Below are positions 6,090 through 61,577 of a DNA stretch of 64,000 bases, piece after piece; position 1 is the stretch's first letter; each line of letters opens with the position of its first letter. The notes under the pieces were generated by a model that searched no databases, was not told the DNA's origin, and saw nothing but the letters and a program-made list of their open reading frames with translations. The translations under genes and the position numbers were made by a program. The DNA lies in IMG/VR virus record IMGVR_UViG_3300032322_002561, positions 124,001-188,000 of that record. One strand, 5' to 3'.

Positions 6090-6584
6090 TTAAATTATTT
6101 TGTGCCACACGTTATCAGGCCCCACATCAAATTTGATTTGACAAATATCCAATGCTTGTTGCACTGAGGGGTAGTCAACATCGTGTCCAATTAACCCGCG
6201 ATCGGTTTTTAACAAAGGTTGATACGCTTCAATATCCCTAACCACACTTTTTGTGCCATGGCCAGCATCAATAAAACAAAAATCAATCCGGTGATTGATA
6301 CGTTTGGCCTGTTCCCAACTGGTACCTTCTAACACCATTAATCGATCACCGTATTTTGTTGCCACAGAGGAATTATAAAATTGAGAGATGTTGTTATCAA
6401 CCGCATACATTTTCAACGTGGGGTTATGATCTAATAGATAAAATAACACTCTTCCAAATCTTACACCAACTTCAACACCAATCATCCAATTATGTTTTTT
6501 GACCTGTTGATCAAGATATAGCTCGCGTTGAGCTGGCAGAGTCCAACTCACAGTCATCGGTAAAGGATTTTTTATTTTAGCCAC
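6090..6584 (-). CDS. class I SAM methyltransferase (Methyltransf_24-like)
   Basis: VEVGVRFG, FIDAGH, IGHD. Confidence 0.8.
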   Translation of the reverse strand: MAKIKNPLPMTVSWTLPAQRELYLDQQVKKHNWMIGVEVGVRFGRVLFYLLDHNPTLKMYAVDNNISQFYNSSVATKYGDRLMVLEGTSWEQAKRINHRIDFCFIDAGHGTKSVVRDIEAYQPLLKTDRGLIGHDVDYPSVQQALDICQIKFDVGPDNVWHKII

Positions 6585-6590
6585 GTAAAA

Positions 6591-7187
6591 TTATTTGCGT
6601 CCAATTACCATGAATCTTGTGTATTCGGTTTCGGGATCACGTAAACGCATACGTCCATGATATAAAACTTTGCTAAGTGGAAAACGGTCCACTATGTCTT
6701 GTGTGCTTTCAAAATTCTTGTTTGGATCATGATCTCGCGCTTGCATGGCCACCAAGGTGCCCGAGGGTATGTTCAAGAACCAAGCTCGACCAGGCATGTC
6801 AGTAAGGCTGGTATTGATCACACAGCCCTGATCGCCTAGCTGTCTATAATCTAGCCGGTTGCTGTCAGCCAACATATATTCTGCATTGTCGACGCCCACA
6901 CGATCCAGTATCTTCTTGCTGCTTGATAAAAATTTCTTGTTTTTTTCTACCAGGACGATTTTGTCTGCACTGATTCGGCCTTCCAAGGTCATGTACAAGG
7001 CAGTGTTGCCATACCAGGAACCCAGCATGTAGATGGTTGAGAAACGATCTTGAATGCGTTCCAGTTCTTTCAACAACCAGACTTTGCTGGCTGTGAGATC
7101 GCGTGTGAAACTGCCAGCAAGGCTGTAGCCACTGCTTTCGTCTAGGTTAGACTGGTGCGTAAGGAAGTCTTGGAGTATCACTGCCAT
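6591..7187 (-). CDS. class I SAM methyltransferase with putative cleavable leader (ILQDFL...NLDE)
   Basis: MLGSWYG motif I, INTS, C-terminal YTRFMVIG. Confidence 0.7.
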   Translation of the reverse strand: MAVILQDFLTHQSNLDESSGYSLAGSFTRDLTASKVWLLKELERIQDRFSTIYMLGSWYGNTALYMTLEGRISADKIVLVEKNKKFLSSSKKILDRVGVDNAEYMLADSNRLDYRQLGDQGCVINTSLTDMPGRAWFLNIPSGTLVAMQARDHDPNKNFESTQDIVDRFPLSKVLYHGRMRLRDPETEYTRFMVIGRK

Positions 7188-21067: not shown

Positions 21068-23315
21068 AGATAATTCCTTCGCTGTTTAGGCCCGGCAATA
21101 GATGCGTTTCAGTAACAAATTCTATGTGATCTTCGACTAGGTTCACAATGATTGTGCAGTCTCTCAATTGATCAAACAGAATTTTTTTACTAAGTGGCAC
21201 ACGGATCAATTCGTCAATCTTGCGGCTCAAGGGTCTGGCCCCCATTTTAGAATCATAGCCTTTGTCGGCCAAGTATTCTATCACGGGTTCTGTGATGTTG
21301 AGTCTTATGTTTTTGGCCTGCAAACTTCCACGCAGTTCATCCACAAACTTGACCACAATTTTTTTGATGGCCAATGTGTCCAGTTTCTTGAATTTGACAA
21401 TGGCATCTATTCGATTGCGTAGTTCAGGACGGAAAAAATCTTTTAGGGCCTTGTCTTCACTTCCGGTACGTTCAAGTTCAGTACCAAAACCAATATTGTT
21501 GTTTTCATTGTCCCTGGCACCAAGATTGGAAGTCATGATTATGATACAATTTTTAACATCTACCCGTTTGCCATTGGCCGATGAGATATGACCTTCGTCC
21601 AGCATCTGCAACATGATGTTGATGACATCGGGATGAGCTTTTTCAATTTCGTCAAACAGCAATATAGCAAAAGGGTTTTTGCTCACATCGCTGATTAATT
21701 TACCGCCGCCCACATTGCCATCTTCAAAGCCCACATAGCCGGGCGGTGCGCCAATGAGACTGCTCACAGTGTGACGTTCTTGATACTCACTCATGTCATA
21801 TCGCAACAGTTTCATGTCAAGATTTTCCGCCAGGAGTTTGGCCAATTCGGTCTTGCCAGTACCAGTGGGACCAAGGAACAAGAAACTGCTCATGGGTCTA
21901 GCACTGTTGCCTATGCCAGCAAAACTGATGTACACACGATCCAACACAGTGTCCACGGCTGACTCCTGACCATACAGGCGCTGTTTGATATTGCTGTCCA
22001 GTTCCACAATCTTGGCACTGCGTTCATTTTGCAGTTTGTCTGTGGGTACACCTGTGAATCTGGCCACTTGTTCCTGAATCATTGTTCTGGTAATAGTCAC
22101 AGTGCCTTGATCTTTTACTCGTTCTCTGGCACAGGCAGCATCAATAAGATCAATGCTCTTGTCAGGATTTTTGCGATCATGTATGTAGCGGTTGGCATAT
22201 TCCACAGCAGCTGTCATGGCCTCGGTGTCAATTAACACGTCATGAAACTGTTCTAGCCTTGGACTCAATCCAATCAGGATCTGTTCCGTGGTGGCGGCAT
22301 CGGGCTCATCAATGGCCAACCTATAAAATCTACGCATGAGTGCTCGATCTTTTTCAAAGCTTTCGTAGTATTCTTCCCAGGTGGTTGAAGCAATGACCTT
22401 GAGATTGCCTCGTGTGATGGCCGGCTTGAGCATGTTGGCAAAATCCAAGGTACTGTTGCTGCCTGCGCCAGCACCCTTCATGGTATGTGCTTCGTCAATG
22501 AACAGGATGCACTTTTTCTTGGTTTCCAAGGCTGCTATCACGGCCTTGAATTTTTCTTCAAATTCGCCACGATATTTTGACCCAGCCAGCAAAGAGCCTA
22601 TTTCTAGACCCCAGACTTCATAGCCTTGAATAAATCGTGGCACACGTGCGGCCACAATTTCCTGTGCCAGACCATCCACAATGTGTGTTTTGCCTACGCC
22701 AGGATCGCCTACCATGAGCACGTTGGCCTTGAATCTGCGTGCCAGCACTGTGATTAGTTCCTGCACTTCTTCGGCTCGTCCTATCATGGGTTCTAACTTG
22801 TTGGCCTGAGCCAAGGCAGTGAGATTGGTACAGTATTCTTCTAGAATCTCTGTGGCCTGATTGTTGGTGAGCTTTGCATCGTTGTGATTGTAATGTTTTT
22901 GCCAGAACTCTACAAATTCTTGTTTTTTTACTCCGTGCTTGAGCATGAAATACTGTGCATGGCTGTGTGCTTCACTCATGATGCTGAGATATAAATCCAC
23001 AGTGGCCATGCTGCGTCGACCTGTAAACATGACCTGCACATTGGCACGATTGAAAAGACGTTCCAAGGCTTGAGTTTTTCTTGGCTGTAGATTGGGATCT
23101 TCATTAATCAGATTAACAAGACTGCGCAGATAGGCCTGTATTTCAGTTTCCAAAATATCAACTGCTACACCAAATTTTTCCAAGACTTTTCTAAAAGGTG
23201 CATGTTTGATCAAGGCCAGCAACAGATGTTCGGTTAGAACATATTCGTGTTTGAGATCACGGGCTATGCGCACCGCTTCTTCTACAATTGCTTCTATTTC
23301 AGGATTGTTTTGCAT
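21039..23315 (-). CDS. clpA: ATP-dependent Clp protease ATP-binding subunit ClpA
   Basis: Clp N-domain; two AAA+ modules (GDPGVGKT/LFIDEAH; GPTGTGKT/LLFDEIEKAH); IGF loop; 758 aa. Confidence 0.9.
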   Translation of the reverse strand: MQNNPEIEAIVEEAVRIARDLKHEYVLTEHLLLALIKHAPFRKVLEKFGVAVDILETEIQAYLRSLVNLINEDPNLQPRKTQALERLFNRANVQVMFTGRRSMATVDLYLSIMSEAHSHAQYFMLKHGVKKQEFVEFWQKHYNHNDAKLTNNQATEILEEYCTNLTALAQANKLEPMIGRAEEVQELITVLARRFKANVLMVGDPGVGKTHIVDGLAQEIVAARVPRFIQGYEVWGLEIGSLLAGSKYRGEFEEKFKAVIAALETKKKCILFIDEAHTMKGAGAGSNSTLDFANMLKPAITRGNLKVIASTTWEEYYESFEKDRALMRRFYRLAIDEPDAATTEQILIGLSPRLEQFHDVLIDTEAMTAAVEYANRYIHDRKNPDKSIDLIDAACARERVKDQGTVTITRTMIQEQVARFTGVPTDKLQNERSAKIVELDSNIKQRLYGQESAVDTVLDRVYISFAGIGNSARPMSSFLFLGPTGTGKTELAKLLAENLDMKLLRYDMSEYQERHTVSSLIGAPPGYVGFEDGNVGGGKLISDVSKNPFAILLFDEIEKAHPDVINIMLQMLDEGHISSANGKRVDVKNCIIIMTSNLGARDNENNNIGFGTELERTGSEDKALKDFFRPELRNRIDAIVKFKKLDTLAIKKIVVKFVDELRGSLQAKNIRLNITEPVIEYLADKGYDSKMGARPLSRKIDELIRVPLSKKILFDQLRDCTIIVNLVEDHIEFVTETHLLPGLNSEGIICVDSISNQD

Positions 23316-60042: not shown

Positions 60043-60227
60043 TACTTGGCGCTCAAGGCTTCTTTTTCTGCTGTGATTTCTTTGCGTCGCTCTTTGATGG
60101 CTTTGGACATTTCTTGCAGGGCTTTTCTAGCGCGAGCAGCAGATGCTTTAACGCCTTTGCCTGTGAACTTGTCATTTTCGGCGATGTAGGTTTCGAATGC
60201 GGTTTTGATTGCTTCATGATTGGTCAT
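60042..60227 (-). CDS. histone H1-like/Hc1-type small basic protein
   Basis: KF..KGVKASAARARKAL.E....KE.RK. Confidence 0.65.
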   Translation of the reverse strand: MTNHEAIKTAFETYIAENDKFTGKGVKASAARARKALQEMSKAIKERRKEITAEKEALSAK

Positions 60228-60289
60228 TTTTGTTCCTTGATTAAATGTGCAGAATGCACTTTGTAATTATACGGCAAAAGTGCAGGGTG

Positions 60290-60553
60290 TCAAATATTAA
60301 TATGCCGTTTTAGCCAAGGATCCCAAACTGCCAGATTGTCCCAACCATGAGTCCAGGTCACAATAAACAAACTTAAAGTATTGTGATCAAATATGTGCAT
60401 GCGGTTGTCCTCCACTCTTGCAGATATAGATTTGCTGGTTTGGGTCCATCGGATCAGGCGATCACGGGCTGAGCTGTCTCGGTAAATCACTGTGAAAAGA
60501 GGTTGTTCGCTTCTGTAAGTTGATAAGGTCATGCTAGTGTATGGTTTGATCAC
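60290..60553 (-). CDS. hypothetical protein
   Basis: ORF in operon. Confidence 0.6.
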   Translation of the reverse strand: MIKPYTSMTLSTYRSEQPLFTVIYRDSSARDRLIRWTQTSKSISARVEDNRMHIFDHNTLSLFIVTWTHGWDNLAVWDPWLKRHINI

Positions 60554-60770
60554 TGCTCCTTGGTTCAGTGATCTCGTTTACATACTTAGCAAACTTGTCG
60601 TCCAAAATGACCATTTCATCGTCGTGCTCGGCAGCACGGTCGGGGTCTACACCCATGACACGCATGAGACCGCCCACGTGTACTTCGGTGATGCCATGAT
60701 GATACAACACCATCATGAGCTCGTACATGAGCACACGAACTTCTTGTTCCAATTTTGGATCGTCTAGCAT
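60534..60770 (-). CDS. hypothetical protein
   Basis: TAAATT 5 nt upstream of ATG. Confidence 0.7.
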   Translation of the reverse strand: MLDDPKLEQEVRVLMYELMMVLYHHGITEVHVGGLMRVMGVDPDRAAEHDDEMVILDDKFAKYVNEITEPRSSDQTIH

Positions 60771-60786
60771 ACTATAATTTATGCTT

Positions 60787-61112
60787 GAAAGAAAGTGCCC
60801 GGCTACCTTATGTCAAAAGGCCCCGGGCTGGAGTATCATCGTTATCTAGTTCCGCACTAGCCGCGTAGTAGGTTTTAGTCTAACCTACCCAACCCCACAC
60901 CGTTCTGGTTGATGCGTTACCCCAGGTATAACCCCCTGGACGGGTGACATTGGTTTTGCTACTGGACTATTTGCTGTAGATCATATGCGTTACTCGAGTT
61001 TACATCTTATCTCTACAGTTACTCAGGTCTGATCAAACCCATGGCTTCCAATAGCAAAACCAATATCAGGGGACTTATGGTCTGGGCCTACACCCAGCGT
61101 CCGGCCCCTGAG
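60787..61112 (-). ncRNA. about 325-nt structured non-coding RNA of unknown family
   Basis: 20-bp stem 61047-61066/60947-60966 (two U-G wobbles on minus strand), at least 6 further stems, U-rich 3' end. Confidence 0.7.
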
Positions 61113-61115
61113 CAA

Positions 61116-61451
61116 TTAGGCTACTACTGCATCTACAGACTTGACAGCGGCCTTGGCTTTTAAACCTTTGCCAGCTACTTTGACTTCGCCTTTCTTGGCA
61201 ACTTTGGTCTTTTCTGCCAGCTTGTTGGCTACTGCATAACCTGCATCGCCACTCTGACCCAAGCTCTGCAAGTGCTGGAGAGCTTCCAACTTGGTCATTG
61301 CACGTGGCAATTCGATCAAGTTGATGTCAGTGCAACCTGCCTTGTTTAGGATCTTGATACGAGCTACCAAGTCGTTTGCAAAACGTGCCTTAACAGTACC
61401 GTTAGGGTTTTTTGCTGTGCCTGCTACTGTGAATAATTTTTCTGCTGCCAT
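61116..61451 (-). CDS. basic protein with Lys/Ala-rich tail (paralog of 62868)
   Basis: AG...G..K.R.A...R...L...G...TK..A pattern; own sigma70-like promoter 61515-61543. Confidence 0.75.
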   Translation of the reverse strand: MAAEKLFTVAGTAKNPNGTVKARFANDLVARIKILNKAGCTDINLIELPRAMTKLEALQHLQSLGQSGDAGYAVANKLAEKTKVAKKGEVKVAGKGLKAKAAVKSVDAVVA

Positions 61452-61577
61452 TTTGTGTTGCCTTTCTAAGTTGCCGTACTAGTTGATTAAATTTACTACC
61501 TTACTACAATAACCATTATACTTGATATTGGTGTCAATGTCAACCATAATAGCTATATCTGGTTAGCCAAAACTGCC

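What the first reader, a model, noticed from the sequence alone, without database searches (positions are those of the whole stretch)
60787..61112. Unclassified structured ncRNA of about 325 nt directly downstream of a small basic protein gene
Seen: an intergenic region with no credible ORF, almost fully paired on the minus strand. It has TCAGGGG/CCCCTGA (61111-61105/61072-61066) enclosing CTGGG/CCCAG, and a 20-bp helix (61066-61047/60966-60947) whose only two non-Watson-Crick pairs are U-G on the minus strand but A-C on the plus, which indicates strand. Other stems are CTGTAGA/TCTACAG, CCAGG/CCTGG, GTAGGTT/AACCTAC, CTAGT/ACTAG and a final GCCCGG/CCGGGC followed by TTTCTTT. The 9-mer GUAACGCAU occurs twice (60993-60985, 60920-60912), with GAGUAAC and GAUAACG variants. 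It begins about 4 nt after the stop of 61116-61451. Inference: a co-transcribed protein + RNA unit (RNP, protein sponge or type III TA-like pair) expressed early.
Basis: partly seen in the sequence, partly recalled or inferred. Interest (0 to 1): 0.82.

Follow-up and report, generated by a model that had tools for sequence, protein, structure and literature searches.

The report
Self-pairing phage RNA behind an early gene
The "325-nt RNA" is four separate pieces, and its 124-nt core belongs to a widespread, apparently undescribed RNA family of giant freshwater phages whose two hairpin loops always carry palindromes, the signature of an RNA that binds copies of itself.

Summary
But the region is not one 325-nt RNA and not a partner of the 111-aa protein.

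It has four modules, which occur independently in relatives:
- A: a hairpin, 61111-61066.
- B: a three-way-junction RNA, 61068-60945.
- C: a clade-restricted block, 60950-60829.
- D: a terminator-like hairpin, 60828-60787.

Only 7 of 80 loci encoding the protein carry B.

B belongs to a family of over 100 distinct members in uncultured giant-phage contigs. About 96% of cells pair, and 28 of 34 pairs show compensatory changes. Most members sit inside tRNA arrays, on the tRNA strand and flush against the neighbouring tRNAs. Eleven lie directly 5' of a GOLLD RNA.

Both loops hold palindromes that change while staying palindromic. Loop 2 shows nine different perfect hexamers plus one G.U-compatible variant. 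Loop 1 shows at least seven different 4-nt cores. Pairs between adjacent bases cannot form within one chain, so I infer intermolecular kissing loops and self-association.

The biological role is unknown. I rate this a new variant of a known kind, the phage tRNA-array RNAs that form homo-oligomers.

The parts
61515..61543 (-). Sigma-70-type promoter (TTGACA, 17 nt, TATAAT) upstream of the 111-aa gene. It is the likely start of the transcript that carries A, B, C and D.
   Evidence: 12 of 12 consensus matches. No other minus-strand promoter-like site until 60293-60266.
61116..61451 (-). 111-aa gene (p111). It has a conserved alpha/beta core, a long helix and a disordered Lys/Ala-rich tail. Function unknown.
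   Evidence: 2928 homologues, none named; pLDDT 74, tail below 50; no PDB fold match; no family.
61066..61111 (-). Module A: a GC-rich hairpin 4 nt after the stop codon, with an inner CUGGG/CCCAG stem and a conserved RUAAGU on the 3' side of the loop. It has no U-run.
   Evidence: z -2.28; the same hairpin type follows p111 in about 25 of 80 loci, and the outer stem covaries (GGGG/CCCC, GGGUGG/CCACCC, GAGAG/CUCUC). It occurs once in the window.
60945..61068 (-). Module B: a three-way-junction RNA and member of the phage family modelled as R1. P1 pairs 61068-61047 with 60966-60945. The short arm is 61040-61025. The long arm is 61018-60974.
   Evidence: 114.5 bits, E 2e-20, coordinates 60943-61069. 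(z -6.59). (covariation). (coordinates).
61030..61035 (-). Loop 1 palindrome UGAUCA in the 8-nt loop of the short arm. Proposed self-pairing (kissing) site.
   Evidence: the core at this position is GAUC, GCGC, GUAC, ACGU, GGCC, CUAG or UGCA in the first 63 members. The two self pairs are 55 GC + 1 UA, and 42 AU + 11 CG + 5 UA + 2 GC.
60992..60999 (-). Loop 2 palindrome ACUCGAGU (core CUCGAG) in the 13-nt A-rich loop of the long arm. Proposed self-pairing (kissing) site.
   Evidence: nine different perfect hexamer palindromes occupy this position in 100 of 101 distinct members. The exception, CGGUCG, is self-complementary through G.U pairs.
60829..60950 (-). Module C: a clade-restricted block that begins AUGUCACCC and overlaps the last 6 nt of P1. 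It contains three small hairpins (60939-60922, 60888-60868, 60860-60846). Function unresolved.
   Evidence: relatives exist only in L302 and L290 (window type) and in L183, L004 and L002/L282 (second type). It occurs without B (L002, L302). 9 of 28 pairs are compensatory in 6 sequences; z -0.04.
60787..60828 (-). Module D: a terminator-like hairpin (GCCCGG..CCGGGC with an inner CCUU/AAGG stem) followed by ACUUUCUUUC. It is the likely 3' end of the p111 transcript.
   Evidence: z -3.42, 89% of the ensemble; nearly invariant in all loci that carry C. The simple terminator scan missed it because of its internal loop.
60768..60784 (-). Conserved GCAUAAAUUAUAGU motif ending at the AUG of the 78-aa gene (60534-60770). 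It is not part of the RNA and marks the start of the next gene unit.
   Evidence: CATAA(A/G)T lies 6-7 nt before the ATG of the p78 homologue in most loci of the clade. It does not recur in the window.

Best explanation
The 345-nt gap between the 111-aa gene and the 78-aa gene is an insertion hotspot. In this phage it holds four independent RNA modules on one early transcript: hairpin A, module B, block C and terminator D.

Module B is the core. It is a 124-nt RNA of a family spread among uncultured giant freshwater phages. It folds into a three-way junction with three parts:
- a 20-bp closing helix whose sequence is free to vary;
- a short arm with an 8-nt loop;
- a longer arm with a 13-nt A-rich loop.

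Each loop displays a palindrome, here UGAUCA and ACUCGAGU. I propose that each palindrome pairs with the same loop of another copy, as in the HIV-1 dimerisation hairpin and the symmetric bridges of GOLLD and OLE. B would then form symmetric dimers, or closed or linear multimers.

In most phages B is cut out of tRNA precursor transcripts by the tRNA-processing enzymes. Here it has moved to the 3' untranslated region of a strongly expressed early gene.

Shown: family membership, secondary structure, strand, genomic contexts and palindrome-preserving covariation.
Inferred: transcription, processing, self-association and any biological role. The role is most likely that of a self-assembling phage RNA particle, related in use to GOLLD and ROOL.
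For: Modularity:
- Alignments A1, A5 and A8.
- L002 and L302 have C and D without B.
- L008, L020, L006 and L021 have A and B without C.

Family and structure:
- Model R1 finds one copy per locus at 83-144 bits in IMG/VR and metagenome contigs.
- On a plain MAFFT alignment, 28 of 34 pairs have compensatory changes.
- In the first set, 96.5% of cells pair, against 74% when shuffled and at most 42% when slid.
- A second set from another collection gives 96.1% paired and 25 of 34 pairs compensatory.

Strand:
- Paired cells hold 230 G.U against 30 A.C.
- In all 54 array loci among the first 63 members, every tRNA has the element's orientation.

Processing context:
- The closing helix includes the encoded NCCA end of the upstream tRNA in 43 of 46 flush cases.
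- A downstream tRNA starts -4 to +12 nt from the last pair in 54 of 101 members.

Self-pairing:
- Loop 2 carries nine different perfect palindromic hexamers in 100 of 101 members, plus CGGUCG, the G.U intermediate between CGGCCG and CGAUCG.
- Loop 1 cores are GAUC, GCGC, GUAC, ACGU, GGCC, CUAG and UGCA in the first 63 members.
- Self pairs score 0.423 covariation against 0.078 shuffled (0 of 500), and at most 36% of cells pair when slid.
- Loop 2 needs at least 9 switches, or 21 by parsimony on a loop-masked tree.
- Pairs between adjacent or near-adjacent bases cannot form within one chain. PMC12286853 uses the same argument for OLE and GOLLD.
- Duplex energies are comparable to the HIV-1 dimerisation palindromes.

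GOLLD link: 11 distinct members lie 409-434 nt upstream of the GOLLD 3' domain, which is the length of the GOLLD 5' region.

Phage-only distribution: 0 of 17 pattern hits in 185,579 cellular genomes match the model.
Against: - There is no expression or end-mapping data. All members come from uncultured phages, and no cultured phage matched.
- Self-association is inferred from sequence only.
- My search patterns fixed the flanks of loop 2. The first pattern also fixed the loop itself, so the dominance of CUCGAG is partly by construction.
- One member (L141) has a GNRA-like loop 1 instead of a palindrome.
- The window copy lacks the tRNA flanks that would define its ends, so it may remain part of the mRNA.
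- Close relatives (L002, L003) have lost B, so it is dispensable.
- Block C is not more stable than shuffled sequence, and its role is open.
Confidence: 0.62

Rival explanations
1. Module B is an accessory of GOLLD RNA: a 5' extension or a companion that docks on or regulates the GOLLD cage. On its own it has no function, and the window copy is an orphan or works with a GOLLD encoded elsewhere in this genome of 236 kb or more.
For: - 11 of 82 distinct members with enough downstream sequence lie directly 5' of a complete GOLLD on the same strand, at a fixed distance of 409-434 nt.
- GOLLD also uses symmetric kissing loops.
Against: - Most members sit flush between two tRNAs with no GOLLD in the fetched 10-15 kb.
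- There is no GOLLD in the 64-kb window.
- The palindromes of B pair with themselves, not with a GOLLD loop that I could identify.
Confidence: 0.15
2. One reading: the RNA and the 111-aa basic protein form a ribonucleoprotein, sponge or toxin-antitoxin-like pair.
For: - The two are adjacent and probably co-transcribed in this phage and in about 9 relatives.
- The protein has a basic disordered tail.
- Hairpin A follows the gene in a whole subclade.
Against: - 73 of 80 protein loci lack B.
- Most B members are in tRNA arrays.
- There are no tandem repeats.
- The protein has no nuclease or defence family match.
Confidence: 0.07
3. The palindromes act in DNA: they are binding sites for dimeric proteins, or a cruciform at an origin, packaging or recombination site.
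For: Hexamer palindromes are typical of sites for dimeric DNA-binding proteins, and the whole element is an inverted repeat.
Against: - G.U to A.C asymmetry is 230 to 30.
- Orientation relative to the tRNAs is fixed in 54 of 54 array loci.
- The element sits flush against the tRNA ends.
- Nine different hexamers would each need their own protein.
- One variant is self-complementary only as RNA.
- The flanks of the palindromes are asymmetric and A-rich.
Confidence: 0.04
4. The region is only 3' UTR furniture: stabilising hairpins plus a terminator, or a selfish hairpin element that inserts between genes, with no trans function. Block C plus D could instead be a leader that controls read-through into the 78-aa gene.
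For: - The gap is an insertion hotspot whose contents vary.
- B is lost in close relatives.
- C+D directly precedes the 78-aa gene in 5 of 6 loci.
Against: - Junction and loop-flank sequences of B are nearly invariant across more than 100 members while the helices covary. That fits a folded functional RNA, not a passive hairpin.
- The termini vary, unlike transposon inverted repeats.
- There is one copy per locus.
- In L004, C+D precedes a different gene.
Confidence: 0.1

Closest known systems
GOLLD RNA (Rfam RF02032) and ROOL RNA
   Same: - Phage-encoded and located in tRNA arrays, with function unknown.
- They form homo-oligomers through kissing loops, including symmetric self-pairing loops supported by palindrome-to-palindrome covariation (PMC12286853).
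- 11 members of the B family lie directly 5' of a GOLLD.
   Different: - B has about 125 nt against roughly 600-830 nt or more.
- B is a single three-way junction instead of about 27 stems.
- There is no sequence or model match.
- The window has no GOLLD and no tRNA.
- Assembly of B has not been observed.
HIV-1 dimerisation initiation site (kissing hairpin)
   Same: - A 6-nt palindrome sits in a hairpin loop, flanked by unpaired purines.
- Natural variants switch between palindromes (GCGCGC, GUGCAC; established knowledge).
- Duplex energies are similar.
   Different: - B carries two such loops on one three-way junction, so each molecule has two self-interfaces.
- It is not part of a viral genome RNA, and there is no homology.
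phi29 prohead RNA (pRNA)
   Same: A phage RNA of about 120 nt built on a three-way junction, with two loops used for intermolecular pairing and a long helix formed by the two ends (established knowledge; mentioned in PMC12990946).
   Different: In B each loop is complementary to itself.
- Nothing links B to DNA packaging.
- No Rfam family, pRNA included if it is in release 15, matched the window at E <= 10.
Phage T4 stable RNAs rnaC and rnaD (species 1 and 2)
   Same: Small stable RNAs of 139 and 119 nt at the end of a phage tRNA cluster, released by tRNA processing, with function unknown for decades (annotation in AF158101).
   Different: - No match to model R1.
- rnaC has a tRNA-like T arm, and neither has the two palindromic loops.

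Membership tests
Module B family (model R1, defined here) | Full-length match to the covariance model built from 32 members | tested here: met
   Window 60943-61069, minus strand: 114.5 bits, E 2e-20, model positions 1-131. The window's own contig copy was one of the 32 training rows, so this match is partly by construction. Members not used for training score 83-144 bits.
Module B family (model R1, defined here) | Palindrome in both hairpin loops | tested here: met
   UGAUCA at 61035-61030 and ACUCGAGU at 60999-60992.
Module B family (model R1, defined here) | Location inside a tRNA array, flush against tRNAs | tested here: not met
   No tRNA in the 64-kb window. The window lineage carries B behind the 111-aa gene.
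GOLLD RNA (RF02032) | Match to the Rfam covariance model | tested here: not met
   No hit in the window at gathering score or at E <= 10. The same search finds GOLLD at 191-223 bits in L114, L094 and L147.
GOLLD RNA (RF02032) | Homo-oligomeric cage seen by cryo-EM | not testable with these tools
   Only sequence evidence for self-pairing loops is available.
Type III toxin-antitoxin (ToxIN-like) | Antitoxin RNA made of tandem repeats of about 36 nt | tested here: not met
   Tandem Repeats Finder found 0 arrays in 60700-61200. The only direct repeat is a two-copy 14-mer.
Type III toxin-antitoxin (ToxIN-like) | Adjacent endoribonuclease toxin gene | tested here: not met
   The 111-aa, 78-aa and 87-aa proteins have no PADLOC, Pfam or PHROG match.
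tmRNA | tRNA-like domain plus tag reading frame | tested here: not met
   ARAGORN found none in the window. The only Rfam trace is a 14.9-bit permuted-tmRNA match (E 1.6) over the end of the ORF, far below the cutoff of 47.
Intrinsic terminator (module D) | GC-rich hairpin followed by a U-run | tested here: inconclusive
   The hairpin is stable (-19.2 kcal/mol, z -3.42), but the tail is ACUUUCUUUC with interrupting C's. The simple scan did not call it.
T4 rnaC / rnaD | Sequence and structure similarity to the T4 RNAs | tested here: not met
   R1 with filters off gives no hit at 2909-3172 of L303.

The most novel reading that the evidence does not exclude
Module B is the smallest natural RNA-only building block found so far. 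In this reading, a 124-nt three-way junction joins through its two self-complementary loops into closed rings, filaments or small cages in infected cells. It may work together with GOLLD cages, and the loop palindromes may act as a phage-specific assembly code.
Probability: 0.25. Interest if true: 0.88.

Novelty: new variant of a known kind. Interest (0 to 1): 0.72.

Why it matters
- Natural RNAs that assemble with copies of themselves were recognised as a class only in 2025 (GOLLD, ROOL, OLE). Their function is unknown, and they are large and hard to manipulate.
- A 124-nt family with two loops under the same palindrome-preserving selection would give a small system for studying RNA self-assembly. 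It occupies the same genomic niche and is sometimes fused head-to-tail with GOLLD. Loops can be swapped and heterodimers designed.
- The family also offers a handle on what such RNAs do for phages that carry large tRNA arrays.
- It shows that 3' UTRs of early phage genes can host RNAs that elsewhere are released by tRNA processing.

Tried and rejected
- **Known RNA families:** no hit in Rfam 15 at gathering score or at E <= 10 on the window, nor at the positions of typical family members. This excludes all curated families at that sensitivity, including any SRP, 6S, Y RNA, 5S, ribozyme, riboswitch, pRNA or DIS models the release holds.
- **tmRNA:** only a 14.9-bit trace over the ORF end, and ARAGORN found none.
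- **Intron splitting one gene:** rejected. The 111-aa and 78-aa genes are separate in all relatives, with a terminator and a conserved start motif between them.
- **Small ORFs in the gap:** the 30-aa and 37-aa ORFs are not credible. By my own reading of the aligned sequences, the ATG that opens block C gives 21, 23 and 24 codons in the window type and only 8 in the second type, so there is no conserved peptide.
- **Repeat or mobile element within the window:** BLAST finds only the element's own two arms plus short matches at chance level. One of these lies inside a coding region at 21475.
- **Transposon-like inverted repeats:** the termini vary and covary, so this is rejected.
- **Cultured phages:** no DNA match for the window region or for a typical member, and no protein match for the 111-aa gene.
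- **Cellular genomes:** 17 pattern hits, none real.
- **Identity of the 111-aa protein:** Pfam, PHROGs, PADLOC, the Atlas, an AlphaFold model and a PDB fold search gave nothing.
- **Alignment of hairpin A with MAFFT and RNAalifold:** failed because the 5' strands were misaligned. I read the covariation from the raw sequences instead.
- **Literature:** five searches found no description of this family.

Full report
**1. The observation**

The region 60787-61112 lies on the minus strand between a 111-aa gene (61116-61451) and a 78-aa gene (60534-60770). It holds no credible ORF.

- The long helix pairs 61068-61047 with 60966-60945. It has two U.G pairs that would be A.C on the other strand.
- The whole stretch folds to -122.4 kcal/mol on the minus strand (z -3.68). 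The plus strand reaches -105.6 kcal/mol (z -1.98).
- A perfect sigma-70-type promoter lies at 61543-61515.
- Rfam 15 has no match at gathering score or at E <= 10.
- ARAGORN finds no tRNA or tmRNA in the whole window.

Folding the pieces separately changes the picture:

| Piece | z-score |
|---|---|
| Long hairpin (B) | -6.59 |
| Last hairpin (D) | -3.42 |
| First hairpin (A) | -2.28 |
| 122 nt between B and D (C) | -0.04 |

**2. The RNA is not a partner of the protein**

The 111-aa protein is common: 2928 homologues, all unnamed. It is found on contigs of up to 364 kb in IMG/VR. These are uncultured giant phages, many of them from lake and other freshwater metagenomes by their source records, and GenBank phages have no match.

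In 80 loci the space after the gene ranges from an overlap of 20 nt to 345 nt.
- Most relatives have a plain terminator there.
- The gene order 111-aa, 78-aa, 87-aa is conserved. The first gap ranges from 63 to 2146 nt and often holds extra small genes. It is an insertion hotspot.
- Only 7 of the 80 loci contain the long hairpin.

Alignment shows four modules that occur independently.
- **A** is a hairpin right after the stop codon.
- **B** is the long hairpin.
- **C** is a block shared with only five other sequence types.
- **D** is a nearly invariant terminator-like hairpin.
- L002 and L302 have C and D without B. L008, L020, L006 and L021 have A and B without C.

The type III toxin-antitoxin idea fails. 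There are no tandem repeats and no nuclease or defence family match. The protein model has a confident alpha/beta core and a disordered basic tail, but no structural neighbour in the PDB.

**3. Module B is a member of a large phage RNA family**

I ran three pattern scans of IMG/VR, one of JGI and other metagenomes, and one of cellular genomes. Each was followed by a covariance model (R1) built from 32 sequences.
- They gave more than 100 distinct members, one per locus, at 83-144 bits. A few shortened variants score 46-59 bits.
- The window copy scores 114.5 bits.
- None of the 17 pattern matches in 185,579 bacterial and archaeal genomes fits the model.
- No cultured phage has a member.

The structure is a three-way junction:
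- a closing helix of 17+3 pairs whose sequence is free;
- a short arm with an 8-nt loop;
- a long arm with two internal loops and a 13-nt loop;
- nearly invariant junction strands (AAGC, GUAAC, AAUAA, UGA, GCAAAUAGU).

Covariation supports this fold.
- On an ordinary MAFFT alignment, 28 of 34 pairs show compensatory double changes.
- On the model-fitted alignment, 96.5% of cells pair, against 74% after shuffling and at most 42% after sliding. The covariation score is 0.616 against 0.187.
- A second set from a different collection gives 96.1% paired and 25 of 34 pairs compensatory.

**4. Context and strand**

Of the first 63 members, 54 lie inside arrays of 2 to 45 tRNA genes. Every tRNA in those loci has the orientation of the element.

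The element fits its tRNA neighbours closely.
- In 46 of 101 distinct members an upstream tRNA with an encoded CCA end abuts the element. In 43 of these the first pairs of the closing helix include the last 2-7 nt of the tRNA, most often 4.
- In 54 of 101 the next tRNA starts -4 to +12 nt from the last pair.
- The upstream neighbour is most often tRNA-Glu(UUC).

I infer from established tRNA processing that RNase P and the 3'-end enzymes would release an RNA of about 125 nt. T4 rnaC and rnaD occupy the same kind of place but do not match the model.

**5. The loops**

The two hairpin loops carry palindromes, and the palindromes change while remaining palindromes.
- At one fixed position of loop 2, 100 of 101 distinct members have a perfect hexamer palindrome. 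There are nine kinds: CUCGAG, CACGUG, CGAUCG, CAAUUG, CUGCAG, CAUAUG, CGGCCG, UCUAGA and CAGCUG.
- The one exception, CGGUCG, is self-complementary through G.U. It is the expected intermediate between CGGCCG and CGAUCG.
- Loop 1 has GAUC, GCGC, GUAC, ACGU, GGCC, CUAG or UGCA in the first 63 members. A looser scan of all 101 finds further kinds.
- One low-scoring member (L141) has a GNRA-like loop instead.

I counted these positions as pairs of a base with its mirror base. The two inner pairs of loop 2 each show four pair types and almost no unpaired cell. Covariation is 0.423 against 0.078 shuffled (0 of 500), and at most 36% of cells pair when slid. On a tree built with the loops masked, the loop 2 hexamer changes at least 9 and up to 21 times.

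Pairs between adjacent bases cannot form inside one chain. This is the argument Kretsch et al. used to support the symmetric bridges of OLE and GOLLD (PMC12286853). The palindromes are set off from the stems by unpaired A-rich flanks, as in the HIV-1 dimerisation hairpin, and their duplex energies are similar.

I therefore infer two self-pairing interfaces per molecule. That allows symmetric dimers, rings or chains.

One caveat: my first pattern fixed loop 2 and the later ones fixed its flanks. The frequencies are biased by this, but the fact that every variant is a palindrome is not.

**6. A link to GOLLD**

Rfam finds GOLLD RNA in three B-bearing arrays, each with a tRNA-Asn embedded in it. 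A profile of these three hits finds more.
- In 11 of 82 distinct members with enough downstream sequence, B ends 409-434 nt before the GOLLD 3' domain, on the same strand.
- The GOLLD 5' region is 420 nt in the solved RNA, so B sits directly 5' of the whole GOLLD.
- Eleven arrays of the flush type have no GOLLD or ROOL within 10-15 kb, and the window has none.

B is thus a separate unit that shares GOLLD's niche and is sometimes joined to it.

**7. The other modules**

- **A:** the hairpin is present behind the 111-aa gene in about 25 of 80 loci. The outer stem covaries and a conserved RUAAGU lies in the loop. It occurs once in the window. Its role is unknown.
- **C:** it has relatives in only a handful of contigs. 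It shows 9 compensatory pairs in six sequences but no excess stability. It occurs without B and, in L004, before a different gene. It may be a separate small RNA ending in D, or a leader; I leave this open.
- **D:** it is probably the terminator of the early transcript. The 78-aa gene then starts behind a conserved CATAA(A/G)T motif found across the clade.

**8. Verdict**

- The single 325-nt unit and the protein-RNA pair are not supported.
- The core belongs to a new family, absent from Rfam 15 and from the literature I could search.
- By its sequence, the family belongs with the self-assembling phage RNAs of tRNA arrays.
- Transcription, processing, assembly and function are all inferred and remain to be tested.

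Noticed in passing
L114:8247-8702 (-), L094:1132-1594 (-), L147:1448-1910 (+): GOLLD RNAs (191-223 bits) sit in giant-phage tRNA arrays, each with a tRNA-Asn embedded in the linker. Module B lies directly 5' of the whole GOLLD in 11 distinct loci.
   Followed up: partly
window 61066-61111 (-); L007, L012, L057, L010, L028, L077 just after the p111 stop: Hairpin A is a conserved motif of its own. It has a covarying outer stem (GGGG/CCCC, GGGUGG/CCACCC, GAGAG/CUCUC), CAGG on the 5' side and RUAAGU on the 3' side of the loop, and no U-run. It replaces the ordinary terminator in one subclade.
   Followed up: partly
window 60768-60784 (-) and the same place in most of L001-L080: A conserved CATAA(A/G)T motif lies 6-7 nt before the ATG of the 78-aa gene across the clade, right after the upstream terminator and with no Shine-Dalgarno sequence. 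It could be a phage-specific promoter giving a leaderless mRNA, or a translation signal. It does not recur in the window.
   Followed up: partly
46 tRNA-flush family members, e.g. L099:2860-2870: The closing helix of B pairs with the genome-encoded NCCA 3' end of the upstream tRNA in 43 of 46 cases. The tRNA end is therefore sequestered in the precursor transcript.
   Followed up: partly
tRNA arrays next to B, e.g. L116:222-457, L123:1363-1607, L160:5520-6025 and 6156-6618: There are several other recurrent non-coding gap elements without long ORFs: about 225-250 nt after tRNA-Glu (8 loci), about 190-560 nt, mostly after tRNA-Ile (11 gaps in 10 loci), and mostly about 465 nt before tRNA-Asp (6 loci). 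No Rfam match was found where tested (L123, L159, L160).
   Followed up: partly
window 60045-60227 (-), promoter 60266-60293 (-): A 61-aa gene matches the histone H1-like protein Hc1 (Pfam PF07432, E 4.5e-12, above cutoff). It has its own perfect TTGACA-16-TATAAT promoter.
   Followed up: no
L002:3090-3170, L003:3355-3390: Close relatives keep the outer 8 bp of B's closing helix (UGAUAUUG / CAAUGUCA), but a different, shorter hairpin replaces the interior. This looks like replacement or decay of B in place.
   Followed up: no
L302:1376-1762: A 128-aa membrane protein gene is inserted between hairpin A and block C in one relative. This shows that C and D stay together next to the 78-aa gene when other DNA is inserted.
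   Followed up: no
L117:11639-12008 (-), L082:2777-3297 (-): tmRNA genes lie on the same giant-phage contigs as the tRNA arrays. L117 has a beta-proteobacterial type at 152 bits with tag ANDSVYALAA. L082 has a permuted type at 83 bits.
   Followed up: no
window 61116-61219 (-): A weak permuted-tmRNA match (14.9 bits, E 1.6) covers the last codons of the 111-aa ORF, which ends ..AVVA-stop. It is far below the cutoff and I treat it as chance.
   Followed up: yes
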